DNA from: Fimbriosthenelais zetlandica | Lineage: Eukaryota | Length of the DNA stretch: 64,000 nucleotides | Assembly (NCBI GenBank): GCA_977030845.1 | Contig: OZ365114.1 | Span: 19,220,001-19,284,000 of the forward strand | Direction: 5' to 3' | In this document: positions 1 through 28,255 of the stretch, one piece after another | Layout: each line of letters opens with the position of its first letter | Position numbering within the stretch: the stretch's first letter is position 1 | Position numbers and translations under genes: made by a program | Notes under the pieces: model-generated | Databases searched by the model: none | The model's input: the letters and a program-made list of their open reading frames with translations, nothing else | Told to the model about the DNA's origin: nothing

Positions 1-2934
<2,934 letters not shown>

Positions 2935-8700: not shown

Positions 8701-10728
8701 CCATATATCCATAATATGTAAAGCGAAAAAACATATTCAACACGAATTTCAAAATGTCGTAATTGATTAATAGGGTACATAGGCAAATCCTATGTATGGG
8801 GAGCGGGGAGGGGATCGGGTGCTTGTAGCGCACGACATATATTTGAGCGACAAAATAATTATGAATCTACAGGAGGCGGGAGTTGGTCCACTCGACCGTC
8901 CATCTGAATCCACCTGGAAATGGTGAGGGGAAGAGTAGAGGCGTTACGAAAATGCTCGTGAGTGGCGAGGCAATGAAAGAGGAAACTTAAACAACACATA
9001 TATCAGGCGGCTGGTTTGAACCGTCGTAATTCTCTCTCCCACGCACTCCCCCATCCTTTGTTAGCAATTCAGTTACAGAAGCACCTCAAGTTTTCAGATT
9101 TATCCAGAATTTCAGCCTAGGTAGTCTAATTAACCTTCTTTAAAGAATAAACCTCCAACAGAGTATGATTATAGTTGACACTTATGTAATTGCCAAACAA
9201 ATGAGCTTTGTTTCAAGTGACAGACTGATACTTTTAAGCATATTAATGTCAGGAGAATTTTGAGCTGTAAATTAGGACTCTCCTAAACCATGCAGCCAGA
9301 GTACACAAACTACTCTGACTGTTTGATGGATGTGAATCAAACTCGTTATGCTGTAGTAAACTTACAACCTGTCATACACAGTAGTGTGAGGAGCACCAAA
9401 GCTTTGTTTGAATGTGGCCATAATAAAGATTATACTACAGCCCTGGAACAATAGAATGGTGACATGATCTTGTCAGGTAACAACTCATGTCCCTCTTTCT
9501 GACGATGGCAATGGAGTAACACCCACAGATTGGGTCCTTTTACTTTTCATTTCTCGTCGTGAGCATACATTTTACTGGATCCAGGAGAAAGACAGTTCCA
9601 TTATGGATGCCTTCTATATTTTAAGACCCTTTGGGATAATCTTCTTCCTTAATCTCTATTTCAAAGGTGTTTTAAGTCAATATACGGAAGAGGATCTCTT
9701 TCAAGAGTTCGAGAAAGGGCTTCAAGGCAATGGACATTCAACACTCGAGTCTCCAATACAACTGAATCAGAGGTAATTTCAAGTAATACATGCTCCATTT
9801 ACTTTAAGGCTTTCTATGTAATAATTTGCCTCTATGTATACATCTCGGGATTATTTCCAGTGGGACATAGTCCTTCCGTATATAGCAATATACTAAGAGA
9901 AATACCAAGAAAACCGGTGCTATAAACTTTAAATGGATGCCAAACACTTGATATAAAATTAGTTTCATCTGGCGACTGCTAGAGACACCTTCAAGGACAG
10001 CCAAGATGACCGTTAAAAAACAGGGGTGCACGCGCTCCTTTATATAGAAGTTCTTGTCCAAATTATGTGGAGAAATATAGGGAATGTCCCTCCACGATAT
10101 ATTTAACGTGAATGATCAATTATGTCACGAAAAACTGGAAATTGCATGCTTCGAATTTAATTTCCTTTTCACAACAGGTTACCGGAATGGACGACATCCA
10201 TTCCAACCAACACACATAGACATGAACACAATTTGAATTTCGGGAGGAAGTATTGGAACGAGAGACAGATGAACCAATTAGTAATACAAGATGATGCTTT
10301 GACAGAAGGTTTGCTAGATACATATTCTCATTTTTCCATTGCATTTAAATCTATAGATCTAATTAATTTCTCGATGATCACATCAATTCAATTCAATGCC
10401 TTTAGTCCGCAATTATTGTTCATGAAATTTTAATTTAAAATATTCTGCTTTTAATTCAAAATATTCTGCTCTTTATGACTGCTATATGACACCTACACCC
10501 CATAAACTATTCATAATAGGTTGCTTCCCAGCAGGGGCTTATCAGCCATTCCTCTTAATATTTTATGTACACACATAAAATATAATGGCTCTAATTCCAA
10601 GGTAGAGCCTCCAAAATCCATCAAATTATAATTAGTTCGTTTTATACTAGTATTTGGTAATTTCAAGGATGTATTAATATAATATGTATTCACTCATGCC
10701 TTGTAACATTTATCATTTCTTAACCCAG

Positions 10729-11102
10729 AAAATATTATTGGAAAAGAAAACAGGAATGAGGTGGATAGAGACTACAACATGAGGATTGAGTCCAAGGTAA
10801 TATATGTCTTCGTGTACTACATTCAAACTCAAAAAAAACTAACAATATATTATCCAACACAGGTTATGACAAAATGATGTCAAACTAACGATTTCTCTTA
10901 TGTCTGAAAGCTGTTTTTAGAATCTACATTACACGACCCCAGAGAGGCACAGTGGGAACCGCTGAGCAATGCTTCAACCATGGACGGCCGCCTAGTCACA
11001 GTGGCGACGCCTAGTGTCAATTCATCAGCCAAACCCAGCTACTCACTCCACTACACGTGGCTCGTTCTTCTTGTGATCAAATCCATTTATATGCACTTTT
11101 AA
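10729..11102 (+). other. Candidate last two exons of an unidentified gene or pseudogene ending in a GPI-signal-like tail
   Basis: cag|10729-10796|gtaata reads (E)NIIGKENRNEVDRDYNMRIESK. aag|10911-11102 reads LFLESTLHDPREAQWEPLSNASTMDGRLVTVATPSVNSSAKPSYSLHYTWLVLLVIKSIYMHF*. The phases join. No upstream exon or ATG found. Confidence 0.35.
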
Positions 11103-13549
11103 TGAGAAATAATTATGTAAAGTCTTACACAATACAGAAAACGTCATATGGCTCTATATTTAAATATCATAAAAGAGTTGAATAATGGCTAGTGTGTCCG
11201 ACACTCACAATTAGATAGGCTGATTGAAGTGGATGTCACGCACTCTAATTGTAATTTATATAATTTGATATAATATGTTATATAGGCCTACATATAAATA
11301 TCTAGAACATTATGCTAACAGATGCTAGATAAAATAGAATCTATTGCAAGCTGAGAAGATTTCTATTATTTAATTGTAAATCATAGCTCTGTAAATTGCA
11401 CAAAACATGCTGTGTACAATATTAACAAAAAAATATATTAAAAGTTATAAATTGTTATGAATATCTCGCATTATCTTGACTTTTTAATATAGCCTAATCA
11501 TATTATTTTAGCATTGATTTTCACTGAGCCTTTCATATAAATCATTGTTACAATGACATTATTGCCCACTATTGGAAGTCGATTGGTTAATGCTGCTGAA
11601 TGGTGGCTAAAATCACCTAATGGCTCGTTGGTTTGGGGACAGGGCTTGGGTGGGAAATGGTGTTAGGGGCACGAGGATATAACGCAAATAGCCTCTATTT
11701 GCGCTAAAGTTAAATGACATAGAAAACACGGAACGAACACTGGAGGAGCGCAATGTGGAACACTCGCGATGTGTGGGGTAAAATGTTGAGACGTACAACA
11801 GAAGGAGGGAAGTAGGCCTACAAAGAGCGCTAAAAGACATGGCACCATATCAGATGTATGGACTGGCAAAGTGATCTTCATGGATTTGTTGATGGAACTA
11901 TAAGTTTACTTGGTATCAGGTGTCCAGTCCCTGAACACGTGCTGTGCTCTGTGCAGCTTTAAAATATGGAAGTATTCTCGTCGAAATAGCAAAGTGACTA
12001 ATTATGAGAGGTGAGTAAAATCTATGCTAACATTTCTTTGAATAAGTCAAATCCTTCTGCGTATAGTAAAGGGGACAGACAACAATGAAATTAAATCATT
12101 ATTTAGAGATGCAGGAAGCATGAAAGTAGCATAGAAATAGAATGTGGAATATGTCCGATTTGTGGGTCGAAAATACTACATGAGACGATCTGCCTATGGA
12201 AGCACGTGTGGACCTACAATAACATGGGATTGGAGACGGAGAGTACAGACAACATCCAATCTTTTGTTTGGAGGTCAGTCATGACATGGAGTTCATTTTT
12301 TAGAGACAGAAGCTGACTGACATGAATGCGATCAGTAGAGTCTATGAAACAAATATGTTGTGAAGAAGGGATATGAACGGTACTGCCAGGCACCCTACCC
12401 TCCCACTCACTGATCATACAATCATGAATCATACATGTCCTAAAGATCATATACACAAGCATATACGGGAACACATGTAAAGTCACTTCTTTATAACATG
12501 ATGCTTTACTTCTAACTCTCACCACATTGTGGCGTTAGGCTTTACCCATGTGGTTGTATGATAGGTCAGACTGGCCATCATTTACCCGGAGGGAGGGGCA
12601 CTTCAAAGTTCACATGAGAACCCATGCTTTTGGATTTCGAGGCCGAAGGTCGAGACACCCTAACTCCCATAGAGCCTGAATGTCAATGTGGGTTATTCTA
12701 TTCAGATCTCTTTAGTATACACGAAGCTTTGATGAAGAAATCACAGAATGTACCATCTACAGGAAACCATTTTCCGGGACATAGTATAGTAATAATTGTC
12801 TGTGAGAGAATGCACTATACGATTTGGTTAATGGGTATAGAGCATAAAAGGGGCTGGAGTGTACTAAAGACATCATGGGCTATTAATTCCCCCGCCCCCA
12901 AGAAATTGCGTGGCTCTTCAATCTTGTGAGGCAAGATTTTCTTTTACAAAATACTCTTTTATATACCGCAGGGAGTTTGATCAAATAAAAAACTAGCCGA
13001 CAGGAAGTAATGTACCCCTGTGCAACTGAAAATGGGCAGAGCATAAGGTACCCACTTTGGTTCTGAGTGCCCGCGATGGGTCATTACCTCTCGCCAACCA
13101 CCTTCCCTACTATCTCACTCTCTCCATCTCCTCTTTCTCCAAATTTTCTGCCAGTTGGAGGATCCCCATCCTCCACTTTTCTCTGGCCTACCTCTCCCCT
13201 AAACTTCCCTCCCAGACCCCCACCCTCCCCGCTCTTTCGCTCTCACTCACTCACTCACCCCCACACAAGTGGCCAGCTGGATGATCCTTTTGGTGGTCCT
13301 TCTCCATCTTTACCCTCCTCCTGATAGTATCTGCCCGGATCAGAGAGGATAACCATCACAGATCAACGCTCTAAACACTCCAAGCTTGCACCGCACAACT
13401 TCTGTCTCCTACTTCAATTCATCCCACTCATCCTACTAATCCACAACAGCCAGAGGGTAAGCTTTGCAAAGAAGTGCATGCCGGGCTTCTTATTAACTAC
13501 TGACTCTCTCAATTATTCTCTTTTCAGAGGGAGGCATAATTACCACATT

Positions 13550-15000
13550 AATTTATTGATTGATCAATTATCACTCCATATTTGTTTAATCTGAATTCAG
13601 TATTGATTAGTTGGAAAGGTTGAAATATTCTTTGAGATTCATAATTGCATGCACAAGGAAGTAAAAATATATTATGATTCTTTACAACACAGAGGGATAA
13701 GTGCAAGGTTTGGGTATTCATAAATATCAAAGAACAGGAGTTAAGGCACATGTATATAACTTCTCATATAAGAATATAGATTGGGATCGTGAGAGATGAT
13801 CCAGCTTGCATGTAAGTGTGGATGAAATTTGGTGGAAGATCAATCTAAATGTGGAAAGCTTACGTAGCGGAAGGATTATGTAAAGAGAGGAGCTCTGATG
13901 AAGGATAAACGATTAAAACTGATAGCACCCGGGATTAGGTGCACCCTACTGAGCAGGAGGAGCCAGCATTGGGGTGAGCAGATTACTGGAAAGCAAAGCT
14001 AACATATTATTTGATAACAATCCGTTGGTTTCTGCACTAGCTTACCCTCTTCATTTTTGTTAAAATGGGGTGGGTGAGGGTTGGATTTATTTCTTGCCTT
14101 GTTCCAAAGTTTTGAAATGATAATTAATTTTACATTATTCGGTCCATCAAGTGCGGTGCATACAATAGGTGGTTTCATGAGTGGGTAAGTTGTATGGAGC
14201 ATGGGGGCCTGGGAGCTGGGGACAAAGGAGGAAGTGTTGGACAGCTATAGAGAAGAATGGCTTGTCTTCCACCTATAACTAAGAAGAGTCAGAGTGAAGG
14301 AAGTCATTACCAATGCATGTACCTCTGAGAATAACGTCAGTCTTTTCCCGCCTGACATTTACATTCTGAAACAAATTAGCTCCAGTACCCTTTGGACGAA
14401 TCAAATCTTAATGTCCCTACAACTTCAGTTGTTCATTTCTGCTATTTTCATCTTATCTGCTTAAGAAAGCTGTCTCTTGTAAGTATCTTCTTATTTCTGA
14501 TTATTCACATGAAATAGTTCATATTCTCTCATATGAGCTCAATATCTCAGGCGGGGCAGCCTCCATTGAGCATCCTCAGGTGCCGATTTTGGTGGAAGAC
14601 CAGCTGTTTTCACCCATTTATGTCCACAAGTATTTTATATTTAAGTATTTTAAGTATTTTATATGCTTCATTTTGAGCCCATACAGTCTCCAGCATTTGG
14701 ACTCAAGGGCAGGGCTAGCATCATTTATTGAACATTTATAACACTCTTGTTCTGTGCTCCTCACAAGAAGGGCGCATGGATTGCTCCCCAAGTGGCCGTA
14801 CCACAACCTGTTTACAGCTGTATTGATCCGCGTTTGTGGGCTGGAAAAAGAATAATCCCGACACCCCACTTCCGGCAAAGCTCTGCAGTTTCCACCAATC
14901 AGGGTGCCGCGCAGAAACGGGCAGAAGAGGTTCCCAACGGATACCTGCATCGATTTGCTACAAGAGACCGGAAGCTTCTTTTCTAACCCCAAGAGAAAGG
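13550..15000 (-). mobile_element. Degenerate non-LTR retrotransposon (LINE) fragment, endonuclease to linker region
   Basis: Minus-strand translation gives broken APE-like motifs (gtagggacattaagatttgat, resembling VGDxN; TDVILRG; NDFLHSD, resembling SDH), followed by SKLWNK..NPHPPHF-type linker sequence. Many stops and frameshifts; boundaries approximate. Confidence 0.4.
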
Positions 15001-15453
15001 GGTTTTTATTGGATGAATATGGAACACTTGCTCTCTTTCTGTGGCTGGGGATGCTTTGAGCAACAAGAACTAAAGCACAGATAATTGGGTGAAGAATGGA
15101 GTGATGAAAAGAGACGGTATAATGTGAAGATGAATGGAGTGAAGATCAAGAAATAAGGTCGATACATTGGAGATGATTTGCCTATGCAGAAATGCAGTCT
15201 CTATATAAGAAAACGAGACAGATTTTTCAGGCGCCAGGGAATGAAAACTGAGTTTCCTCTGCTTTCTCACTTTGACGCCCACATGTTCTTTGTAGGGTAG
15301 CAATGCTAACACGTATGTGGAACTTGTATCAAACTAGTTACAAATGGTATAAGGAATACTAGTACTAGAATTCCAGCCATACTCGGTGAGTTGAATAACA
15401 TGCTGTCTTCTTCCTTCCTGTCTTTCTCATTAGCTACTCGACCGGTGAGTAGG

Positions 15454-18400
15454 ATGGACACGAGCAGTTGGATTTACATGGTTACCTTTCTTGTATCAGT
15501 CAGTCAACTACCTCATGCTTCAGGTGAGTCATTTTCTGCTCGCTTAGATATCTTTACCTTCATTGTCGTTTGATCAATTATTGGCCTATATATATCAACA
15601 GAAAATAACTAAAAGACCAGATATATTGGACATGATTTACGTGCATGAAGACCGAAAACAAGAGTCTATAGGATTTCATTGTCAAGCAAAGTGATGTTCA
15701 TAGTATATAAACAGGTCCTACATCTGACGAGTGAATAAAATGACATAATAATAACCTCGGAGATCTGCAATATTCACCCAATTCTCCCCCAAATCTACCC
15801 ACCCTCGAGTTCTCCCACTTTTTGCCTCCAGCTCTTCCTGGCACTTGCCTGCCTCACCCTCTGCCTTTTTAGCCAATCATCAAAGCCTCAGCCAGCTTCC
15901 TAGGGAGCATTCATTATTTGCAGTTAGTGAGGCATGGTAGAATCGTTATTCATGGATGATTAACTGATTCTTGGATCCACACACAGGCAGTGCTATGGCA
16001 TTTATCGACCCTGGTGAAATCTGGGGCCAGTTATGCCGAGTGCCAAGTGCCACCTGGCGGATTAGGCCTAGTTCTCTCAGTCCACGTGATGTCGAAGGCT
16101 GTGATGTGATTGGGGAAGTATGTCATGTGATCTATAATGCCCTTACTGAGGCTGGTTCAGGTTGCACTGAGAGGTCCCTTTATATATCCACCCAACTCAA
16201 AATTCACAAAGCCATATTTTTTCTTGATCTACGGCATCGTTTAAAAATCAATATAAGCACAGCATTGGCCTGGGTATGTATTATATAAAATATAGAACTT
16301 TATGATTTCACATTTGACTTTTTTCTGTTCACTCAGCTGATCATAATGCCAGCTCTCTACTGGAGCGAGTGGCTCACACGTATTGGAACTGGAAGATCAG
16401 GCAGTTCCCAACGATTGCCTCACAATTTTACATTCCCTACATGGACGACAAACTTGAGAACTATTCAATCTTCGCTGCAGAGGAGAGATACGTAAGAGAT
16501 ATCAATTTGCATGCCAAACAAGTTTGCATGGTTACTTTTCATACGACAAGACTAAGTTGCGAATATGTAGATTCTAAACGTCTCACAAGTTCAATATTGG
16601 ACATCCTTTCCTTATGAAAATCACTCAATTGGAATCTAATGACTAGGGTTGGATTGCAATTTCATGAACATATAGAAATGTAGGCTATTCTGCTTTTTTT
16701 CCAGGAATATGCTGGTTCACTTTGGCACCACTTACAGCGTGTTAACGTCAGTGAGCTTGATGATAACGACACTCTCACATATGACGTGTTGACATGTGAT
16801 TTACGACACTTAATAGATGGCTACAAATATAGAATGTAAGTAGAGCCAATAAATACCATATACACTACAGAGGGAAACGGAACGTCAATGCCACTCTCTC
16901 CTTCCTCTCCAATTGTCTTCCCACCAAACCGATCACTATGCCACACACTCACACGCCCATTTTAAAACAATACAGGACACTGGTGGAATTTTCCTTTTAG
17001 TGACCCTCATAATTGCTCTCTCAGTCCTTCACCTCTCCAATATCTACCCACCCGAATTCCTGCCACCTTCCCAAGAACCCACTCGCCCATCCTGCAGTGA
17101 CATACGAAAAATTATGCGGCCCTTGATTTCTCACACCTTCATCTACGCCCGGGTTACCTTGGTTAAATCAGTTGTAGAAACATTGAACCCTCGCACCCAC
17201 CTGCATGTGCTCTTACATATCACCCATGCAGATGCTTAGGTATAATTAACGTTGCCGTCAATCTTTCTCCAGGTACGGCTCTGTTAATCCCATCAACTTC
17301 CTCCAAGGCTTCCACATGAGGAAGTCATGGATCAGGAACACGATACTTAACACCTTCCAATCTTATCAACGGTTTCTGAAGCGACTGGAGAGCGTTGCCG
17401 TTCAGGTTAGTCCAAAACATCCAGTATATTTATAATATGTGAATAAGAACTAGTCAAGTGTCCTACTAAACCCATAATGATCAGGTAAAATAAATCGGTT
17501 CATTATTTCAGGTTGATGATGTCATAGTCTTAATGAGGGAAGCTGTTCGGCTCAATCATACAAATCATAACGTCTCTATGGTAACTAGAAATTATTTCAA
17601 TGTCGCATATCAAATATTATTAGTAAGTGCCATTGAAGAATTTCCTTTGTGATATCGATACAAGCAATGTAATAATCATATTATTTCTTGCAGACAGGTG
17701 TAGTTGAAGCTGTAAGCTCTGAGCTGGATATACCAGACAATGAAACGGTTTATTTCCAACCTTTTCTTCTACCATCCGGTCTTCAGGCTGCTTACACACC
17801 TTCACAATGGTAGCTAAGCATATTCTTTTAATCATATTTTAAGCATCTCGTCTCTCCGAATTAGATAATCAAGTTTAAACAGAAACTATGGGAAAGTATA
17901 TGACTATATTTTTGATTTTTTTCAGGAAGATCCTTGTTAAAAAGGCATTATACATCATTTCACATATCATTAAGCCAGCATACAGAAGACTCAGGGACTT
18001 CCTAATAGAGGTAAACCTTTTATAATAGGTATGTAGGGAGCCTGTGGATGCTATGATTAACAATATCATGATGGCCTAAATGGCCAGAGTAAGAGATCCA
18101 AGAGAGTTAGCCATCGTTAGCAAGTGTGATGCCACAGGATGTCACATGGTGTTGGTTAGCCAATCAGAGTAAGGAAAGCTTTGGTGCATTGCCATTCTCC
18201 TGTACAGGGGTGGGTGGGGAATGCCATCTAACGGTCCAGTCTCAGGTCAGTGGCAATGCACCAAACCCTTCCTTATTCTGATTGGGCACCATGTGACATC
18301 CTGTGACATCATACTTGCTAAAAGATGGCTGATCTGTGACTGGGGCGAGTTATCATGTTTAGGAATTGATTTCTCTCTACTGAGAGGCATCAGGTACCTA

Positions 18401-21039
18401 TAATTCGTAGTGAAATCAACTATGTTCAGATCTACTAAGTAATTTTATATCATTTAATGTTTGACTACCTGGTACGAGGATGTAGAAAACCTTTGGATAA
18501 ATTCATGCCAAACTGGCAGTGAGAAAAAGTCATTTGGGGTTTCTAGGTTTATCTACCAGCAACCCGGCCAGGCTATGGGGTGGGTTCAATGCCAGGTGGC
18601 TTGGAATATTATGAGGCATGTCTACGTTTCCACCTGACGGCTGATGTCAGTACTGCAGAGATCCGCGACTTGGGGCTAAGAGAAGTGGAGAGGATCAAGA
18701 CACAGATGTACCAAGTCAGTCATTATCTCATCATTATTTTTTGTTATGGAAAGTAAAAATTATGTGATGCATTAAGTGATACAATGTACATGAAAAGAGA
18801 ATGATTTAAGATGCTCAGTCGATTCATTTCAACTAATTTGGCATTCTCTATTACAGATTATCAAAGAACAAGGGTTCAAAATGAGTTTATCCGAGTTCTT
18901 TTCCTTCATACGGGACAATCGAACAGCTCAATTCTACAATAGATCTCAGGATGAGATATTAGAAGGATATAAACATATTATCCATAACGTCATAGCGCCA
19001 AAATTACCCACCGTTCTCAAGGATATGCCAATAGAAGATATTCAGTAAGTTTGTTTAATAGTAATTTCTTCTGTCAAGGAGGAAGATGATCCCCAATAAT
19101 TTCTTGATAGGCAACAAACACATCCTACCATAAATCATAATATTCTATCCAATCTATTGTTATGACAGTCATATGTATTATATTATATATATTATATGCC
19201 TCACTAATATTTTCAGAGTCGTGCCCATGCAAATAGATGGCCCTACTGGTAGTTACAGTCATGGGACATTCTACGTCAATCTTCGACAATCACACAAGCG
19301 GTGCGAAATATGTTCCTAACTGTTTAAACAATTTGAAGAGACCCTCCATCCACACATTCAATAATATAATCGATATTTCATAGTATTTTATCATCATTCT
19401 GGGCATAAGTCACATTCCATTTCCTTTACTTCAGACCCACCTTCACAATGATGGCGTTAGCCCTTCATGAGGCAAATCCTGGTCACCATTTGCAGGTATG
19501 TATTCAGACCATAGAACTATATATAGACGTATAGTTCTATGTTCAGACCACACTTATGGTATACATGTAATTGGGGCCCGGGGTCGGGGTTGGGGTAGTG
19601 CAGAGGATATTTGAAAGTGGTACATATATATACGAGGTGTACATTTGTGGGGGAGTTTTTCTTAATGATAATCAACCAAATACATTATTGGGACCAATTA
19701 GTAATTACACACTTTCTGACCTTCACTTTTCAGGTCCAATATAGCCACCATCAAGATGTGCCTGCATTTCGTCGCTATCTTTGCTGTATGACATACAACA
19801 GAGTCCCCTTTGCCTACCAATGGTACTCTGCATATACCGAGGTAGCTAGGCTTACAGTTCCATACATTTGATAAATAATGCAGTCTTTAGAATTAAGTAC
19901 CTTTTTGTGTCCTTAATAAGGTTCGAGTATGAGAAAATGGTTCAAAATACTCACAATTGATTGGAACTTTCAGGGCTGGGGACTCTACGCTGAGTATTTA
20001 GGTGAACTGATGGGCGTCTACAATCATTCTGCTTTAGAATTGTGAGTCCTACCTCGACCATTACCAAGTCACATTTCTACTTTATACTGCAATCTATTTG
20101 CTCGTGCGACGTTCTAATTGCATCTGTGATTGCTGATTTAGGTTTGGTCGGTACTCAGCAGAAATATTACGTGCCTGTCGACTTGTGGTGGACACAGGCA
20201 TACATGCATATGGGTAAGCCCAGTTTATTTATAATTCCTGTGTTTATTTTACTGACAGAATGGCTCTACAGTTGTTCTGCTTCAGTAGGGATGGATCCAA
20301 GATTTGATGGGTGCGTGGGTGGGTTGGGAGGGTGTTGGGTGGGAGCTTGTGGGTCAAATGAAAATGAATATTAGGCCTATTATGTGACCCCCTGGATCTG
20401 CCCTTGTTCAACTAACGAAAAATTTATATTTGTTTATTTAATCCATGCTCATTTGTGTAGGTGGAGTAGAGAGGAGGCCATTGTGTATTTGGAAGAGCAT
20501 ACAGCCATACCACGTCGTCAGATTGAGGTAGAGGTAAACCGCTACATCTCGTGGCCAGGCCAGGCTTGTGCCTACAAGTATGGAGAGATCACCATCCAGA
20601 GCCTGAGAGAGGAGGCCCAAAAGGCCATGGGTGAGTCCACATACTGAGAATCTTTTATGGTAAATAACATGATGAAAAATGGTACCATAGTCGAAACTGC
20701 CAACAAGAGCAATTTCTGGCATAAATAAACTTTTTCATCAAAACCAGTTAGCTATAAATTATTGGTTGAGAATGGATCCAATCATTAAACAACTCACTTA
20801 ACTATGTTTTACCTTTTGCAGGTGCTAACTTTGATATTAGGGAGTTTAACCACCAAGTACTGAAAGTTGGACGAGTACCTTTGGATGTTCTTAAAAAGGT
20901 TACCAGGAAATGGATTAAAAGGTCGATAAAAAATTGGCAAGCCCAAGTGAGCGATGTAAGCAGTAAGAGTGAACATCTGCGTCTCCAGTCCGCCTTCCTT
21001 TTGTTTCTACTGGCCTGCTGGACAGGCCTGCACCTCTGA
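15454..21039 (+). CDS. DUF885-family protein, paralog A (631 aa): signal peptide, putative zinc-metallopeptidase-like domain, GPI-type tail
   Basis: Exons 15454-15523, 16337-16491, 16705-16835, 17273-17405, 17512-17580, 17694-17809, 17926-18010, 18547-18714, 18857-19044, 19217-19300, 19435-19495, 19734-19841, 19974-20041, 20142-20213, 20461-20630, 20822-21039 (1896 nt, open frame, all GT-AG). Motifs ALHEANPGHHLQ, YTEGWGLYAEYLG, RACRLVVDTGIH, EVNRYISWPGQACAYKYG, FDIREFNHQVLKVGRVPL. AATAAA at 21159. Confidence 0.93.
18107..18332. repeat. Long imperfect inverted repeat (~85-bp arms, 56-nt loop) in DUF885-A intron 7; MITE or foldback-like
   Basis: Left arm 18107-18194 ttagccatcgttagcaagtgtgatgccacaggatgtcacatggtg...ccaatcagagtaaggaaagctttggtgcattgcca pairs with right arm 18251-18332 tggcaatgcaccaaacccttccttattctgattggg..caccatgtgacatcctgtgacatcatacttgctaaaagatggctga. 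Confidence 0.85.
19503..19550. repeat. Small perfect hairpin (12-bp arms) bracketed by a 9-bp direct repeat
   Basis: catagaactata (19510-19521) and tatagttctatg (19530-19541); ttcagacca at 19503-19511 and 19542-19550. Confidence 0.7.
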
Positions 21040-23275
21040 GACCAATATAGATTATTCTAGTTTCCTTTAAAGTGCCACAGGGCAACGGAGAAAGGACTAT
21101 GTTGACGACGTGTACTTTGCAGGATTAATGCGGGAAATTGCAGACTTAAAGTGACATAAATAAAAGTCACAATTAGGCCTATGTGCTCCAAATAGAGCAT
21201 GTTAAGTTTGCATCCAAGACATTTAAAAACAGGAGTCATTCTACATCCGGTGCTTTCTCTCTTTCCCAAATGCCTAGTTCTGGCTGTGGCAAGGTTCTTT
21301 ACAGATAAATGATATAAGTATTTTTGTACTTGGTAATTTGTTATAAGTAAGTGTGTTTTGACATGTAGTTGTTGTTTTGCCTGTAGTAAAGAGGATGAAT
21401 CAGTATATCTGGACAGGTTTTGGATGTAAATAAAGTAATAAAATTTATATATGAGCTCATTCTAGTTTTATCTATATATGCTTAATGTATGCCTACCAAC
21501 ATACCAAATATTGCCATAATGCCATCTGTTAGAAAGCTTCTAAATTAAGCAAAGAATTTGTGGTTTCAGCTAGGTACAATCTTAGAACAAGATCACTAAG
21601 GTTCTGTCACAATGAGATGAAGAGATGATTCTGACACATCTCGGCCCAAGAAAAGATAACAGAAAAAGATGTTCTAACTCTATCAAGTTGTGTCCTGGAG
21701 TCTTTGTCCTGACTTTTTTGGGCGCCTGGGCGAATGTCTGTTTCTGTTCTAAGGATCTAGTTATGTCACATTCATACATGTTAATCGGTCTTCTCTCGCC
21801 CACGATTTGTTCTCGACTGGCCTCGTTATCTCTGGTGAGAGCAAGGCATAAAAAGATGATACTACAACAAGAGCAACCCTTTTTACACCTTTATTCCAGT
21901 ACATGAGTTTCGAAACAGAAGAGATTCGGTAGATAGGAAAGGGTTGTTAAAAGGCGTTGGAAGGATGGGTGAGATATGGAGGAATGGGTCTATAGTAGGG
22001 ACAGGGCAGGTTATTTCTCGTCCCACTGTATTAAAGGGAGACAGGGTTTCGAGTGGGTGGAAGAAACGGTGAGTGACAGTGCAGAGTGCTGAGAAATAAT
22101 AGAACCAATCAGCGACAAATGGCCAGGGTTCTACCGCCCACAGACCCCCAACTGCTCCCCATCCTCCGTCCAACACCAAAAAATATTATCAGCAAAATTA
22201 AATAATTAGACAAGGAAAATGAGGTAACAATGTTTCACCGGGGCCCTTGGTGGTAAATTACTGAGGTAGGAGACAATATTTGTAAAGGAAAACAATGAAG
22301 ATATTTCTGGTGAATGTCCCTAATTTACATCGGACCAGATGAGGTCTGTAATGAGGCAGGGGCTGAAGCAGACCTCTGATTAAGGACTGTCTTCTTCCAC
22401 AACTCCTTCTCCTCCTCACAACAACACAACCAATAATAATGGTGGTCAAATGGACGACAACAAGTAACAAACTATGTGCAGAATGAACGCCACTAACGAG
22501 GCGACCAATCCCTGCATATTTACACGCTCCTTCAAGGCCGCAAATTTCCACACACGACATGAAGCAAAACAAGTCCGTTTTAATGAATTGGAAGTCAAGT
22601 GGTGAGTGCAGAAAACAACTTGGGACAGCTTTCAAAAGCAAAGGAACTTAAAGTGAGTAGTTTGCAAGCTAGGAAATTAATTGGAAAGTTGAAAATAATG
22701 ATGGATTTGAATAAATGAGGTACAGATCTGTTTTAATGATTACGAATAAAATATAAAAGGGGGAAAACAAGCTCAATGAAGTTTGTGCAAAAGTCCATTA
22801 GTGAAATGCCTATCTTACATCTGAAACGAGTAAGATCTAAGTGCCCATGCAGAAATCAAAGAACATCATTGGAGAAATAAAAGACAGTGTAAGCGAGAAA
22901 GAAGGGCAGAAGAACCACAGAAAGAACAAATAACGAAATAGAGGAGCACACCACTCACACTAATCTAGAAGAAACTGGGCCAAATTAATCGGTATTGCAG
23001 TCGTCATCTAACACCGTCGCTTAAGTAGCAACCACAAATTCAACAATGATTAAATACAAAAGTACAAATTACCAATATTTACACATCTATAACTCTTAAA
23101 TCCTTGTACAGACTATGTACAAAATGAGCTTGAATCTTAACATCAAGTTTTGATTTTCCTGTATTACACACTTGGAAAAGATAATTTACATATTGCTAAT
23201 CATCATAATAAATGCAGAAATTAATACTTTGATCTGGCCAGTTTACTTTTGGGGCTGAGTTTTCTCCTCAAATTA

Positions 23276-26200
23276 TCATAATATCATTCTCTGCCCTCGT
23301 GTGAATAGTGAGAGGCATATAGAGCAAAGAATGAGCAGCGTAAGTGACGCCACTCTGACGTCACTTGGGGACCCGGATATGGGTCGTTGTTTGGTGAGCC
23401 ACTCGTGAATGGAGGACTCGAGAATGTCTAGAGGAACGAACCCTTGCCGCAGAACTTCCCAGTGAAATTCTCTCACGTCCATGTTCTCACCTTAATTCAA
23501 TAAACATGCAAAATAATGGACTTCATTTAACCTGTGAATCTATAGGATCTCGCAAAGGAGGATGTGCAAAGCCGACATGTAGGCTGTGAGATATAACTAT
23601 TGTGTTCTTTTGTATGGTCAACGCTGACTATGGAAATGTTTTGTGTTTTAAATTGGTTTAAATTTATCAATTTTTTTATGTGTGAATGCTCCGGTAATTT
23701 AGAAAACCGTGGAATAGTACCGGAAGTGGTCATAAACAGGAAATGCCGAGTTCAGGTGTCGCTATACCAAATCGTCTGGCAGGCTTGAGACGTACTTATT
23801 TCTAACTTAGGCTTAAAACTACTTATTTCTAACTTAGGCCTTAAAGTTACTATACATATAAATTCCGCGAGCGGTTGTATATGTACTCACCGAGTGTTTC
23901 TTCTGCTCTTTTGCGGAGTTCCTTTATTTTCAGTTCTCCTATTTTATAAGCGCAGGCCTGGCCAGGCCATGTGATATAACGGTCCACTTCAATCTCAATC
24001 TGGGGGCGTGCGATGAATGTATGCTTCAGCATGAAGTCTATGGCCTCCTCACGGGTCCATCTATAATCAGATATAGAGAAGATGGTCATGAGATACAATG
24101 GCTTTCAATTATTCACAATGATCTCTTCCATATTATAAGATAGCTCTATTGGCAGCTACATAGAAAGATTGGCCGTATATGGTTCCCACCTTTTAGCATG
24201 AATCCCAGTATCCACGACCAAACGGCATGCTCGGAACATCTCAAAGGTGTATCGCCCAAAGCTGTTAACAAAAAGCAGAGCAGAGAATCTGTTAAGGGAA
24301 ACAGACTACATGAAATGTCCATGACTTGGAGCTTGATTTCGGGCTTCCGATTGGCATTTCTCAATAGCATTTGTGCAGTGTTAAAGGCAATTTGCACTAC
24401 AAATGAGGCATCAAACTATCAATGGTTTCAGTCAAAATGTCATCTGGAGTAAGGTCAAGACCAACCTCTATGCTAGTGATAAAGTACTCATTACTTATTT
24501 TTTATATTTCATGCAAGTATTAGATTACTTTTAGACACTATAGTATCTGTTGTGATCATGTTTTAAGCAGGGAAATAGGTACCAACTATTCATAAGGATC
24601 AGCGTAGAGTCCCATCTCTTCTCCCATGTGCTCGGCATATAGACCCCAGCCCTGGTGAGAAGAAAAAAACACATGGTAAAATTATGTTCTGCTTTCGCCA
24701 ACGATAAATATTAGAGTAAAACTGCCCCAACTACATTGAGCCACGAGCCAATTCTTCCATTGGAAAGCACTTAGCCCATCACGTCCAACAGTTTAAATAC
24801 TTAGCATCTGTGGTCCATTTTGACATCTATCCTCCCTTTACATATTGTTTAACTATTATTTTACACCTCCACCCACCTCGACCATTGCAGTGTAGTATGG
24901 GAAATGTAGGGGAGCAGAGTACTTCCGGCCTCCCCACAAGTAACGCCTGAAGAGGGGGATAGGCAACTTCTGTGTTAATGACACCTGGCAAGGTAAGGTA
25001 AAACAAGGGTAAACACACAGTGAAAAATTATCATTTAGCCTATACAATTTACGTGTTTTGGCACATCCTTTCCTATAATCATCACAGCGCTTATCCTCTC
25101 ATAGTCTATACGGATCGTATTTGAAATTCATTTCCTACTACTCAAAGATATGAAAAAAATAGCAAAGTTATAATATTTATTATGTGCTTACCTGCAAATG
25201 GTGTCCAGGGTTGGACTCATGTAGAGCTATGGCCATCATGGTGAAAGTGGGTCTGTAAAGCATGGGAACATATGTATAAATAAAACAAGGCTATTAAATG
25301 TCAAGTAGGAGTGAATTAGTCACACTGTAAGTGACATGGCATATGGCCTTGTGTAGAGTAATATGCCAGGCTCACCTGGTAGCTGGACGCCTGGTATTTG
25401 CTAGAAAAGTCCCATCAGAATAAATCGCACTCACACCATCAATTGACATAGCTTCCACCCTGGAGTTCAAAACATAAAATTCGCGATTCATCAACTCATC
25501 AAAAAGAAGAAAATTGCAAAGGAAAAGCCCGTAGATATAAGAAACAACTGAAGCTTTTAAATGAATGCATATACAAGACATGTACATGGATCTGTAGGCT
25601 AGAAAACAATAGAGAAACTCACTTGACTGGAGGAATGTCAGTTAAATTAGTGAAGAACTTCGGAAGCTTAGGCTGTATCCGGTCGTAAATAATATCCTTA
25701 TATTCCTCAATGAGGTCTTCCTGAAACAGGTGGAACGATCATCATCTTAGACAGAGTTGTATGGTTGCTCTTTACAAGTTCAGACTGTGTTTTGACTTAT
25801 ACCATATGAAATTTACATCTCAATAGACCCGGCAAAGTTTTACCACTTACTTCTGTGTGGTTGTAGAAACGGTGCTTTGACTCTAGTACTTTGAAGAAAG
25901 ATGTAAGATTTCCTTGAAATCCTAAAGACCTCATGATCTAATAAGAATAATAAATTTCATTATGTACTATGTAATAATACCACTTCAAGTCATTAACTCA
26001 GTGCATAGTAGTGTACTCCATGCTAAAATATTACGGGGAATTTGGTATAGAGCATACTTACTCTTATCATGTGTGTTTTGATACGGGCCACCTCCCGGAG
26101 GCCTACATTGTGGACATAGTCAGGGTGGAGGTCCACTGACAGGTACCAGCGGAGGAGAGCCCGATAATACTGTAAACCCTGGTGGAGACTCCATACACCA

Positions 26201-28255
26201 TGGTCAGCCCGAGTCCTGGGTAGGTACTCCTTGAAAATATAGCAACAGGGTTCAATCCATAAATGTCCAAACATTGAAGTGCTCAGTATCGATGATAAAT
26301 TCTAAAATCTGCAGAACTTTTCCATAATTATTATGGATATAAGTGTCTTTACACAATGGAATGTTTTTCAATTCATGTGTTATATATCTGTTGCCATCCT
26401 TACCTCAACAATAAAGTTCCTGAGTTTCTGCAGTGCAGGTTGAATGTGGTCTCGGATGGTCCTGCGGCCCTCATGCCGCAATTCATGCCTACAAAAACGC
26501 AATGTCATAAAGGCACTGTTGAAGCTGTACACTGACTCGTAGCTTTGATCAAAGCAGACGCCTGAAACATTTAACTTACCTTCTGTGCCTTGATAAAGTG
26601 AGGTTGTCGAGGAGTTCAGTAAATGGTGGGAAGAAAGGGGTCTCCTGCGGCTCGCGGTTCAAATACTGATCAATTTGTTCTGGCACTTTCACCTGCAAAA
26701 GTGTGTTGCCATATGAATTGTAAATTTGAATTAAAAAGTTACTGTTTATTTTGTCACAAATCTGTTGCAGGTTATCGAATAGAGAGAATGTATACTCGAG
26801 ATCCAAGATGGTTTAAAATGAACAGAAGATACCACTCACAACGGAAACACGATGGTTGGTGGTGCCTAATTTGATAGCGCGGCGCATCAGGGCAATCATT
26901 TCATCAATCTGAAAGAGTATGCATTCCCTGATTGATTGATTGATTGAATGGGGTTTAACGTCACTTTCAACAATTTTTCAAGAAGATTGTTATTAGTTGT
27001 TACCACGTACCTTCTGTCAGTCACGAATTATTTGAATAATTTCACAAATCGAGTGATCAAAAACAACTTGACCCACCTGACGTGGTAGGGAATGCAGACG
27101 TTTGAGGTACTTCCCATAATCGCTTTCGTCCTTGAAGTCGGTAAAGCGGACCCAGGTCATTGATTTATGCATTCCTTCCAGGAAGTTCACCGGACTCAGA
27201 TTCCCATAACTAGATTATTTGAAGAAAGTTATTTATCAGACTTATAGGCGAAAGGGGAAGAGTGTGCAAAACAGTTTTGAACAACATAACACTTTGTCTA
27301 TTTTTGACGTTTGAAGCAGCAGAACTGGAAGCAGATTTGAGAATTGTAACAATGTTCTACTTACTCCCGCCACGCAAAGCCATCGACGTAAGTTTGAAGT
27401 TGATCCTTTAGTACCCATAATGTGAGACGATCAGTCACAGAAAGGCGACCCTCATCTATCACTTTGGCTTCTTCCAAGAATTGGCTGCAGTTATCCTGCA
27501 AAAGGCAGTATCTCATTGCTGTGTATAATTAAAGGGACTGGGAAATGAAAGCAATAGACTGTGTTTAACCAAACACATGGAAGTTCTGATGGACACCTAG
27601 CTGCATATTTGAATGTTAGACTCACCTTTCTTTGTTGGAATGTATCCAAAGAGAAGGACTCGAGTTTATCATCATGATCATGGAAATCTTCACTTGTGGC
27701 ATCTTCAGGATACTGCAGTAATTTCCACTGCCAGAATCTGTCTGTCAGATTTCGTAACTCGGGATCTTCAGGCTCTATACATGATAGAAAGCATGAGTAT
27801 AATGTATTCTAAAAGGTGTATAGGGGACAGATCTGGTGAATTTTTTTTTTTTTTTTTTAAATTTATCTATATAAATTTACACACGAGGCACTATAGAAAA
27901 AGCTATGGCAAGCAGGAGCGCACAAGGATGCTGTTTTCATCCTGCTTCCTGCCGCAACAATTATTACATCAAAATTGCCTGTTTAAACGAAATATTAATC
28001 ACTAATATATTATGCTTAAACAGGCAGTGGCTGCCCTTAAAGTAGACTCTAAAATGTACCCTAGATTAGTGACCAGATTCAGTCCCTAAACACAAAGTAC
28101 ATGTACATGTACTACATTTGGGACATTAATTAGTACATGAAAGTCATTAGTAAGTACAGGTATGCCGAGTGTTACCTACCATCTTGCCCCTGTCCGTTAA
28201 CCAGAATATAGAGTGCAGTAATCAACAGCATCAGGCGCCTCATGCTGGGCAACAT
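23276..28255 (-). CDS. DUF885-family protein, paralog B (627 aa): signal peptide, putative zinc-metallopeptidase-like domain, GPI-type tail
   Basis: Exons 28255-28180, 27774-27626, 27495-27365, 27209-27077, 26908-26840, 26692-26580, 26488-26404, 26229-26062, 25937-25851, 25720-25623, 25459-25376, 25252-25192, 24984-24877, 24651-24587, 24261-24190, 24060-23891, 23490-23276 (1884 nt, open frame). N-terminus MLPSMRRLMLLITALYILVNGQG (start may be M5). Motifs ALHESNPGHHLQ, VEGWGLYAEHMG, RACRLVVDTGIH, EVDRYITWPGQACAYKIG; C-terminus SGSPSDVRVASLTLLILCSICLSLFTRGQRMIL. Confidence 0.93.
23793..23850. repeat. ~27-bp tandem duplication in the last intron of DUF885-B
   Basis: tacttatttctaacttaggc occurs twice back to back. 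Confidence 0.75.
26930..26980 (-). mobile_element. SINE-like tail, (GATT)n + gaatggggtttaacgtcactttcaac, in a DUF885-B intron
   Basis: Tetranucleotide run followed by a gtttaacg core similar to the 5630 and 54649 element ends. Confidence 0.4.

What the first reader, a model, noticed from the sequence alone, without database searches (positions are those of the whole stretch)
15454..28255. Pair of intron-rich, apparently GPI-anchored DUF885 genes: a mainly bacterial family rebuilt as an animal cell-surface system
Seen in sequence: two convergent paralogs, stop codons 2.2 kb apart. Each has a signal peptide, a full DUF885 body and a spacer plus hydrophobic C-terminus with no real cytoplasmic tail (A: ...DVSSKSEHLRLQSAFLLFLLACWTGLHL*; B: ...SGSPSDVRVASLTLLILCSICLSLFTRGQRMIL*). 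Established knowledge: DUF885 is a largely bacterial, functionally uncharacterised family, and many members are N-terminally lipid-anchored lipoproteins. Inference: an old horizontal transfer, or an ancient gene lost in most animals, was domesticated with 15-16 spliceosomal introns, swapped its bacterial lipid anchor for a C-terminal GPI anchor and duplicated. I know of no functional description of such animal surface DUF885 proteins, but I cannot check the literature.
Basis: partly seen in the sequence, partly recalled or inferred. Interest (0 to 1): 0.85.

Follow-up and report, generated by a model that had tools for sequence, protein, structure and literature searches.

The report
Ancient animal DUF885 peptidase-like gene pair
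Two intact neighbouring genes in a probable annelid worm encode membrane-tethered, secreted-pathway versions of an uncharacterised zinc-peptidase-like family (DUF885). The family was inherited from the earliest animals, not recently taken from bacteria.

Summary
Two convergent, intact paralogs lie exactly where stated. Gene A is 15454-21039 on the + strand, with 16 exons and 631 aa. Gene B is 28255-23276 on the - strand, with 17 exons and 627 aa. All splice sites are GT-AG, the proteins are 40% identical, and the stops are 2,236 nt apart.

- **Family:** both match DUF885 (PF05960) from end to end and keep 25 of 26 family-invariant residues, including HExxPGHH and EGWxLYxE.
- **Architecture:** both have an N-terminal signal-like segment on its own 5' exon (phase-1 intron), 7-10 N-glycosylation sequons, and a ~47-aa C-terminal extension ending in a 16-18-residue uncharged segment. 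The same architecture occurs in 69 of 80 mollusc, annelid, brachiopod and nemertean homologs. It is absent from cnidarian, amphioxus, holozoan and bacterial members.
- **Origin:** the horizontal-transfer reading fails. In a careful ML tree, bacteria and eukaryotes split at 100/100, and the eukaryote side broadly follows the species tree. In addition, 14 of A's 15 introns and 15 of B's 16 share position and phase with amphioxus and sea-anemone genes. The gene was therefore already intron-rich in the cnidarian-bilaterian ancestor.
- **Likely function:** a membrane-anchored zinc ectopeptidase. GPI anchoring is plausible but untested.

The family is uncharacterised but widely annotated in animal genomes. 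The scan had already noted this same stretch once (s1-219950).

The parts
15454..21039 (+). Gene A, a DUF885 paralog of 631 aa with 16 exons: 15454-15523, 16337-16491, 16705-16835, 17273-17405, 17512-17580, 17694-17809, 17926-18010, 18547-18714, 18857-19044, 19217-19300, 19435-19495, 19734-19841, 19974-20041, 20142-20213, 20461-20630, 20822-21039
   Evidence: Junction enumeration scored against 8 homologs; all junctions are GT-AG with polypyrimidine tracts. The protein matches the family profile end to end.
23276..28255 (-). Gene B, a DUF885 paralog of 627 aa with 17 exons (given high to low): 28255-28180, 27774-27626, 27495-27365, 27209-27077, 26908-26840, 26692-26580, 26488-26404, 26229-26062, 25937-25851, 25720-25623, 25459-25376, 25252-25192, 24984-24877, 24651-24587, 24261-24190, 24060-23891, 23490-23276
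   Evidence: for the model; Pfam hits on exons; family profile match.
15454..15523 (+). Gene A exon 1: a signal-peptide-like segment (23 aa plus 1 nt), followed by a phase-1 intron
   Evidence: donor CAG|GTGAGT. N-terminal hydropathy is 2.28 over 10 residues. Among the genes compared, this intron occurs only in the lophotrochozoan ones.
28180..28255 (-). Gene B exon 1: a signal-peptide-like segment (25 aa plus 1 nt), followed by a phase-1 intron
   Evidence: donor ATG|GTAGGT. N-terminal hydropathy is 2.82.
19466..19489 (+). Gene A putative metal/catalytic motif HEANPGHH (aa 411-418). The partner motif EGWGLYAE (aa 456-463) spans 19839-19994 across an intron.
   Evidence: The H, E, G, H, H and E/E columns are invariant in 54 homologs.
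25198..25221 (-). Gene B putative metal/catalytic motif HESNPGHH (aa 409-416). The partner motif EGWGLYAE (aa 454-461) spans 24879-24631.
20893..21036 (+). Gene A C-terminal extension beyond the DUF885 domain (48 aa). It ends in a 16-residue uncharged segment (20989-21036) that runs to the last residue. Candidate omega sites are S-K-S and D-V-S, 24-27 residues from the end.
   Evidence: My own rule-based reading, not a trained predictor.
23279..23419 (-). Gene B C-terminal extension (47 aa). It has an S-G-S candidate omega site, an 18-residue uncharged segment (23353-23300), and a 7-residue tail with two Arg.
21040..23275 (.). Tail-to-tail intergenic region of 2,236 nt, holding both 3' UTRs and several AATAAA/ATTAAA signals on each strand
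   Evidence: No notable repeats.

Best explanation
These are two functional, anciently duplicated genes of the metazoan branch of the DUF885 family, in a lophotrochozoan genome that is probably an annelid.

Each gene encodes four elements:
- a cleavable signal peptide on its own 5' exon;
- a ~570-residue all-helical, two-lobed DUF885 domain with the family's complete HExxPGHH ... EGWxLYxE ... RxxRxxxDxGxH residue set;
- N-glycosylation sequons;
- a ~47-residue C-terminal linker ending in a short hydrophobic segment.

The most likely product is a zinc metallopeptidase displayed on the outer face of the plasma membrane. It would probably act as a carboxypeptidase or oligopeptidase on short peptides. 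It is held there by a GPI anchor (more likely for A) or by a very short transmembrane anchor.

The gene family was inherited vertically from at least the cnidarian-bilaterian ancestor, and probably from a holozoan ancestor. Early-branching members look cytosolic. The signal-peptide exon and the C-terminal anchor were added later, in protostomes and lophotrochozoans.

What is shown: the gene models, the family membership, the conserved residues, the fold of a 48%-identical relative, the tree, and the shared introns. What is inferred: peptidase activity, surface location and anchor type.
For: **Gene models.** Searches give the models and one search shows the end-to-end profile match.

**Conserved residues.** Both genes keep 25 of 26 invariant residues.

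**Fold.** An AF2 model of P0049, which is 48% identical to gene B, has pLDDT 93. Structural matches are:
- Z 40/34/31 to the DUF885 crystal structures 3o0y, 3iuk and 3u24;
- Z 14.5-12 to M32 carboxypeptidases;
- Z 14.3 to MATCAP;
- Z 12-13 to M3 oligopeptidases;
- Z ~10 to ACE/ACE2.

Pfam places DUF885 in the Peptidase_MA clan (PMC12572635). Extended His motifs are known in active gluzincins (PMC10499314).

**Tree.** In one search the bacteria/eukaryote split has 100/100 support. Syssomonas branches first, the animals have 100/97, Protostomia 100/96, and Lophotrochozoa 100/100. Gene B joins the siboglinid annelids at 100/99. Taxon identities come, and from PMC7147346.

**Introns.** Positions and phases are shared with Lingula, Branchiostoma, Actinostola and Nematostella.

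**Architecture.** 69 of 80 lophotrochozoan homologs carry a C-terminal uncharged segment (median 15 residues). No bacterial member does, and the cnidarian, amphioxus and Syssomonas proteins have no C-terminal extension (about 14 residues past the domain against ~47). Sequon counts are 10 (A) and 7 (B). The median is 6 in lophotrochozoans and 1 in cnidarians, amphioxus and bacteria.
Against: - No expression data could be obtained.
- No DUF885 protein from any organism has a demonstrated activity. The PDB holds only structural-genomics entries, and literature searches found no characterisation.
- The His motif is HE-x4-HH, not canonical HExxH. I could not inspect the metal-site geometry in the model.
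- Z-scores of 10-14 between helical proteins are only moderately specific (note).
- Gene B's hydrophobic segment is followed by a 7-residue tail with two Arg. In addition, 45 of 69 homolog tails contain K or R, which fits a stop-transfer transmembrane anchor about as well as a GPI signal.
- The fold was predicted for a relative, not for the window's own spliced proteins.
Confidence: 0.7

Rival explanations
1. One reading: a bacterial DUF885 gene entered an animal lineage by horizontal transfer. It then acquired 15-16 introns and exchanged its lipoprotein anchor for a GPI anchor.
For: - The family is overwhelmingly bacterial in databases.
- Bacterial members are still 35-43% identical to the animal and holozoan ones.
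- Distribution in eukaryotes is patchy, and DUF885 appears on a Dictyostelium HGT candidate list (PMC3188802).
- A transfer before the origin of animals cannot be excluded, because only bacteria are available as an outgroup.
Against: - All 19 of the closest bacterial sequences sit on the other side of a 100/100 branch.
- The eukaryote side broadly follows the species tree: holozoan, then cnidarians with amphioxus, then arthropods plus lophotrochozoans.
- 14-15 introns are shared in position and phase with cnidarians and amphioxus.
- Early-branching animal members have no signal peptide or anchor, so no anchor 'swap' occurred.
Confidence: 0.03
2. The same genes and the same ectoenzyme reading apply, but the C-terminal hydrophobic segment is a single-pass (type I) transmembrane anchor with a minimal cytoplasmic tail, not a GPI attachment signal.
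For: - Gene B has 7 residues with two Arg after the hydrophobic segment.
- 45 of 69 lophotrochozoan homologs have K or R in the short terminal tail, as in stop-transfer sequences.
Against: - The uncharged segments are short, with a median of 15 residues (16 in A, 18 in B). That is shorter than typical plasma-membrane helices.
- Gene A's segment runs to the very last residue.
- 55 of 69 homologs have a small-x-small candidate omega site 4-14 residues upstream.
- The tails are at most a few residues long and are not conserved.
- All of this rests on rules of thumb, not a trained predictor.
Confidence: 0.35
3. The proteins are surface or secreted binding proteins, or hydrolases of non-peptide substrates, that use the DUF885 scaffold without peptidase activity.
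For: - No DUF885 member has a demonstrated activity.
- The motif is non-canonical.
- A bacterial DUF885 protein was pulled down with vitronectin, although it was not followed up (PMC10281475).
Against: - H, E, H/H and two E are strictly invariant across bacteria and animals in 54 sequences. That is the pattern of a catalytic metal site rather than a binding surface.
- The nearest non-family folds are all zinc peptidases.
Confidence: 0.12

Closest known systems
DUF885 / PF05960, with the bacterial structural-genomics structures 3o0y (Colwellia putative lipoprotein), 3iuk (Arthrobacter) and 3u24 (Shewanella putative lipoprotein)
   Same: Pfam match above threshold. The same invariant residues are present. 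A 48%-identical relative models onto 3o0y at Z 40, rmsd 2.3 A over 548 residues.
   Different: The window proteins are encoded by intron-rich animal genes. They have a eukaryotic signal peptide, many N-glycosylation sequons, and a ~47-aa C-terminal extension with a hydrophobic end. The bacterial members have an N-terminal lipoprotein or signal sequence, or neither.
Uncharacterised animal DUF885 proteins in databases (molluscs, Lingula, nemerteans, Lamellibrachia, spiders, ticks, crabs, copepod, amphioxus, corals and sea anemones). Spider venom-proteome components (PMC7682650; 'venom protein [Lampona murina]') and a gastropod venom-gland transcript (PMC11359391) belong here too.
   Same: Same family and same clade. 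The lophotrochozoan ones share the signal peptide plus C-terminal hydrophobic tail architecture, and often lie in multi-copy clusters.
   Different: The nearest named relative is only 50% identical (B against Lamellibrachia). The nearest to A is an unnamed metatranscriptome protein at 46%. Spider, tick and most crustacean members lack the C-terminal anchor and appear to be secreted. Cnidarian, amphioxus and copepod members lack even the signal peptide.
M32 carboxypeptidases (Taq/BsuCP type), M3 oligopeptidases (Pz-peptidase, Dcp, neurolysin), M2 ACE/ACE2, and MATCAP/TMCP tubulin carboxypeptidases
   Same: Two-lobed helical gluzincin architecture (Z 10-14.5), with a His/Glu metal-site motif plus a downstream Glu. 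ACE and ACE2 are likewise membrane-tethered ectopeptidases. MATCAP shows that extended His motifs can be active (PMC10499314).
   Different: There is no detectable sequence similarity (8-14% identity in the structural alignments). The motif is HE-x4-HH rather than HExxH or HExxxH. Membership of any of these MEROPS families is not claimed.
GPI-anchored ectopeptidases in general, for example carboxypeptidase M and membrane dipeptidase (recalled from my own knowledge, not checked here)
   Same: The predicted way of working is the same: a zinc peptidase held on the outer leaflet, trimming extracellular peptides.
   Different: The folds and families are unrelated, and the GPI anchoring of the window proteins is only predicted.

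Membership tests
DUF885 (PF05960) | Match to the Pfam model above the gathering score (32.4 bits) | tested here: met
   Single exons already pass: 40.0 and 75.8 bits for A, 42.9 and 79.8 bits for B. The hits are colinear along the model. Both spliced proteins cover a 602-position family profile end to end.
DUF885 (PF05960) | Family-invariant residues (HExxPGHH, EGWxLYxE, RxxRxxxDxGxH and others) | tested here: met
   25 of 26 columns that are invariant in 54 homologs are kept in each gene. A has H to N in the C-terminal F-H motif; B has L to M.
DUF885 (PF05960) | DUF885 fold as in 3o0y, 3iuk and 3u24 | tested here: met
   Tested on P0049, a relative 48% identical to gene B, not on the window proteins themselves. 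pLDDT is 93 and Z is 40/34/31.
Gluzincin zinc metallopeptidases (Peptidase_MA clan) | HExxH-type metal/catalytic motif with a downstream Glu ligand | tested here: inconclusive
   The motif is HE-x4-HH, not HExxH. Invariant Glu residues lie 45 and 52 positions downstream. The geometry in the model could not be inspected. The clan assignment is Pfam's, as cited in PMC12572635.
Gluzincin zinc metallopeptidases (Peptidase_MA clan) | Structural similarity to characterised members | tested here: met
   Z is 14.5 to BsuCP (M32), 14.3 to MATCAP, 12-13 to M3 enzymes and ~10 to ACE/ACE2. All non-family matches are zinc peptidases. The caveat for helical folds applies.
Gluzincin zinc metallopeptidases (Peptidase_MA clan) | Zinc-dependent peptide hydrolysis | not testable with these tools
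   This needs a biochemical assay. No DUF885 member has been assayed in the literature searched.
GPI-anchored proteins | N-terminal ER signal peptide | tested here: met
   Hydrophobic N-terminal cores are present (10-residue hydropathy 2.28 in A and 2.82 in B), each on a separate 5' exon. There are 10 and 7 N-glycosylation sequons, against a median of 1 in members without a signal peptide. This is heuristic; SignalP was not available.
GPI-anchored proteins | C-terminal signal: small omega, omega+2 residues, polar spacer, and a hydrophobic tail reaching the C-terminus with no cytoplasmic domain | tested here: inconclusive
   Gene A fits well (S-K-S or D-V-S, a 6-9 residue spacer, and 16 uncharged residues to the last residue). 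Gene B has S-G-S, a spacer and 18 uncharged residues, but these are followed by 7 residues with two Arg. These are rule-of-thumb tests only; NetGPI and PredGPI were not available.
GPI-anchored proteins | Release by PI-PLC, or a lipid anchor detected | not testable with these tools
   This is an experiment.
Horizontally transferred bacterial gene in an animal | Animal sequences nested within a bacterial clade | tested here: not met
   Bacteria and eukaryotes are separated by a 100/100 branch, and the eukaryote side broadly follows the species tree.
Horizontally transferred bacterial gene in an animal | Introns absent or lineage-specific | tested here: not met
   14 of A's 15 introns and 15 of B's 16 are shared in alignment column and phase with Branchiostoma, Actinostola and/or Nematostella.

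The most novel reading that the evidence does not exclude
Lophotrochozoans converted an ancestrally cytosolic, bacterial-like metallopeptidase into a multi-copy family of lipid-anchored cell-surface peptidases. They did so by adding a signal-peptide exon behind a phase-1 intron and a C-terminal GPI signal. These enzymes may process extracellular peptides such as neuropeptides, hormones or digestive peptides, a niche filled elsewhere by ACE- or neprilysin-type ectoenzymes. Arachnids independently released the same scaffold into venom.
Probability: 0.4. Interest if true: 0.5.

Novelty: new variant of a known kind. Interest (0 to 1): 0.35.

Why it matters
DUF885 is a large family with no assigned function. 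Animal members are annotated only as 'uncharacterized protein'.

This analysis shows that the animal genes are ancient residents with conserved introns, not bacterial imports. That removes a tempting HGT story.

It also shows a clean, datable change of cellular address. Holozoan, cnidarian and amphioxus members look cytosolic. Arachnid and crustacean members look secreted. Lophotrochozoan members look membrane-tethered.

This gives experimenters a concrete hypothesis, a zinc ecto-(carboxy)peptidase, and natural soluble and anchored versions to compare. Beyond that, the pair itself is an ordinary member of a widely present gene family.

Tried and rejected
- **RNA evidence:** two searches for public sequencing runs (RNA, then any kind) listed nothing. 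Splice junctions therefore rest on homology and consensus sites, and read laying was not used.
- **Spliced proteins as queries:** these have no reference form, so Pfam was run exon by exon. The big searches were started from one exon profile and from retrieved relatives. The structure was predicted for relative P0049 rather than for A or B.
- **First intron-mapping attempt:** filtering on 100%-identical HSPs lost most exons. It was replaced by an exact spliced matcher.
- **Chytrid placement:** a chytrid triple-DUF885 protein was added to the tree. It sits on a long branch (1.2) next to Lophotrochozoa in the quick tree. The careful search did not finish in time, so I draw no conclusion from it.
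- **Pair arrangement in Lamellibrachia:** no second DUF885 copy was found within 10 kb of the Lamellibrachia ortholog, so conservation of the convergent arrangement is not shown.
- **Protein atlas:** it returned only DUF885 clusters and no anchor information.
- **Unidentified clade:** eight unnamed eukaryote-like sequences that branch first within the animal clade could not be identified.
- **Pseudogene reading:** rejected. Both ORFs are intact across 16-17 exons with conserved catalytic residues.
- **Recent tandem duplicate:** rejected. A and B are only 40% identical, and each has a closer relative in another species.


Full report
**1. What is in the sequence**

Translating stop-to-stop ORFs of the + strand of 15.0-21.5 kb and searching them against the - strand of 23.0-28.8 kb gave a colinear series of exon-sized matches. 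This showed two diverged paralogs in convergent orientation.

An exon profile from the most conserved exon of both genes was searched against 1.84 billion representative proteins. It returned full-length relatives. I used these for tblastn and to score every frame-compatible donor/acceptor pair at each junction.

- Every junction has one clearly best solution, with GT-AG and a polypyrimidine tract.
- Gene A runs 15454-21039 on the + strand, with 16 exons and 631 aa.
- Gene B runs 28255-23276 on the - strand, with 17 exons and 627 aa.
- A and B are 40% identical, and their 15 common introns have identical phases.

**2. Family**

Single exons already exceed Pfam's gathering score for PF05960. 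The values are 40.0 and 75.8 bits for A and 42.9 and 79.8 bits for B, with further colinear sub-threshold exon hits.

Against a profile built from 54 homologs, both spliced proteins align from end to end, with E-values of 1e-204 and 6e-231. Of the 26 columns invariant in those 54 sequences, each gene keeps 25. These include HExxPGHH (A aa 411-418, B aa 409-416), EGWxLYxE and RACRLVVDxGxH. This agrees with the scan's other note on this stretch (s1-219950). Both genes look functional.

**3. Who else has it**

The family is not rare in animals. Named homologs come from the following groups:
- many gastropods, bivalves, cephalopods and a chiton;
- the annelid Lamellibrachia, the brachiopod Lingula, and the nemerteans Tubulanus and Lineus;
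- spiders, a tick, crabs and a copepod;
- the cephalochordate Branchiostoma;
- corals and sea anemones.

A further homolog comes from the transcriptome labelled Colp12. That is the unicellular holozoan Syssomonas multiformis (PMC7147346).

No vertebrate, insect or nematode name appeared in the lists I saw. This is not a test of absence.

The literature holds no functional study. Animal DUF885 proteins are mentioned only in three contexts:
- an abundant component of unknown function in a pholcid spider venom proteome, with M32-like fold predictions (PMC7682650);
- a gastropod venom-gland transcript (PMC11359391);
- a Dictyostelium HGT candidate list (PMC3188802).

**4. Origin: tree**

A FastTree of 257 full-length sequences was followed by a careful IQ-TREE run. 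That run used LG+C20+F+G4 with ultrafast bootstrap and SH-aLRT on 67 sequences, chosen to include the bacterial proteins most similar to the animal and holozoan queries. Both give the same picture:

- All 19 bacterial rows lie on one side of a 100/100 branch.
- Rooted there, Syssomonas branches first.
- Next comes a 100/97 clade of animals. It contains an unidentified clade of 8 eukaryote-like sequences, then Cnidaria with Branchiostoma, then Protostomia (100/96).
- Protostomia splits into Arthropoda (99/95) and Lophotrochozoa (100/100).
- Gene B is sister to the siboglinid annelid sequences (100/99).
- Gene A is sister to an unnamed metatranscriptome protein (100/99).
- Both lie in one of two old lophotrochozoan paralog groups.

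The A/B duplication therefore predates the split of this species from siboglinids. The placement also fits other agents' notes that this genome is probably an annelid.

Two of the eight unidentified sequences, P0419 and P0223, were looked up. Each lies on a contig whose surroundings hold only sparse short ORFs without Pfam hits, which is what eukaryotic DNA looks like to a prokaryotic gene caller.

**5. Origin: introns**

I fetched the genomic loci of the Lingula, Nematostella, Actinostola and Branchiostoma genes. I mapped their exact exon structures with a spliced matcher and projected all introns onto one protein alignment.

- Fourteen of gene A's 15 introns and 15 of gene B's 16 fall in the same alignment column with the same phase as introns of amphioxus and/or the sea anemones.
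- Eleven positions are shared by all six genes.
- The one intron that B has and A lacks is ancestral, being present in Lingula, amphioxus and both anemones. Gene A therefore lost it.
- The only intron not shared with the non-lophotrochozoans is the first one. It is a phase-1 intron just behind the signal peptide in A, B and Lingula.

The intron-rich structure thus existed in the cnidarian-bilaterian ancestor. Together with the tree, this rules out a bacterial gene acquired and 'intronised' within animals. A transfer into a pre-metazoan ancestor remains possible and cannot be tested with bacteria as the only outgroup.

**6. Change of cellular address**

- **Syssomonas, corals, Actinostola, amphioxus and the copepod.** These proteins start directly at the conserved FWxWRL-xSPEFAT motif and end about 14 residues after the domain. 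They have no signal peptide and no tail, and a median of 1-2 N-glycosylation sequons.
- **Spiders and crabs.** These have signal peptides and many sequons, but mostly no tail. That is consistent with the spider protein's presence in venom.
- **Lophotrochozoans.** Of 80 mollusc, annelid, brachiopod and nemertean sequences, 69 end in an uncharged segment of at least 11 residues (median 15). It sits on a ~45-50-residue extension, with a median of 4 residues after it. 55 of these have a small-x-small motif 4-14 residues upstream.
- **Bacteria.** None has a C-terminal hydrophobic segment.

Genes A and B fit the lophotrochozoan pattern, with sequon counts of 10 and 7. Gene A's 16 uncharged residues reach the last residue, with S-K-S or D-V-S 24-27 residues from the end. 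Gene B has S-G-S, a 5-residue spacer, 18 uncharged residues and then 7 residues with two Arg.

The history, however, is addition of sorting signals to a cytosolic enzyme, not exchange of a bacterial lipid anchor.

GPI against a minimal transmembrane anchor cannot be settled here. I put GPI at roughly 0.55-0.65 overall, higher for A than for B.

**7. Likely mechanism**

An AlphaFold2 model of P0049, built with the 54-sequence alignment, is confident (pLDDT 93, pTM 0.89).

- It superposes on the three bacterial DUF885 crystal structures at Z 31-40.
- The next matches are all zinc gluzincins that enclose short peptides between two helical lobes: M32 carboxypeptidases (Z up to 14.5), MATCAP (14.3), M3 oligopeptidases and Dcp/neurolysin (12-13), and ACE/ACE2 (about 10).
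- Pfam puts DUF885 in the Peptidase_MA clan (PMC12572635).
- Extended His motifs are catalytically competent in MATCAP/TMCP and DPP III (PMC10499314).

The strict invariance of His, Glu, His-His and two downstream Glu from bacteria to animals argues for a catalytic metal site. I therefore read A and B as membrane-tethered zinc ectopeptidases, most likely acting on the C-terminal ends of short peptides. I give this about 0.6.

No member of the family has been assayed, the motif spacing is unusual, and Z-scores of this size among helical proteins are only moderately specific.

**8. Verdict**

It is wrong about horizontal transfer and anchor swapping.
- The pair is one of many such genes in lophotrochozoan genomes, so the finding is a new variant of a known, uncharacterised family rather than a new system.
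- Its modest interest lies in the datable relocation of an old enzyme to the cell surface, and in offering a testable function for DUF885.

Noticed in passing
window 1668-1997 (- strand), with a further ORF at 451-807: An exon of a matrix-metalloproteinase gene (Pfam Peptidase_M10, 88 bits) lies upstream of gene A on the minus strand. The 451-807 ORF looks like a hemopexin-type continuation but gave no Pfam hit.
   Followed up: partly
window 18857-19044 (gene A exon 9) against 25937-25851 plus 25720-25623 (gene B exons 9 and 10): Gene A has lost one ancestral phase-0 intron. Gene B, Lingula, amphioxus and both sea anemones all keep it.
   Followed up: yes
L005:7911-9994 and 10001-24752 (Lamellibrachia satsuma contig JAHXPS010002920.1): The annotated Lamellibrachia DUF885 protein (P0151) lacks its N-terminus. 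The homolog of exon 2 lies at L005:9550-9714, inside the separately called 144-aa upstream 'gene'. The public model therefore seems to be split in two.
   Followed up: partly
P0419 (ENA contig of 2.66 Mb); related proteins P0420, P0424, P0429, P0223, P0235, P0325 and P0347: An unidentified clade branches first within the animal clade, just after Syssomonas. P0419 is an intronless 579-aa ORF in a gene-poor, eukaryote-like contig. The source organisms are unknown.
   Followed up: partly
P0002 (chytrid Boothiomyces, 1690 aa) and P0001 (Amycolatopsis, 1654 aa): Both proteins carry three tandem DUF885 domains. In the quick tree the chytrid domains fall on the eukaryote side on a long branch, and their placement is unresolved.
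   Followed up: partly
P0282 (Plakobranchus), P0345 (Elysia), P0292 (Lymnaea): P0282 and P0345 combine DUF885 with a ShKT domain (PF01549). P0292 is named a ShKT domain-containing protein by UniRef. This fits extracellular or secreted use of the scaffold.
   Followed up: no
window about 37339-57935: Other first-stage notes place a CASK gene downstream of gene B. I did not check this.
   Followed up: no
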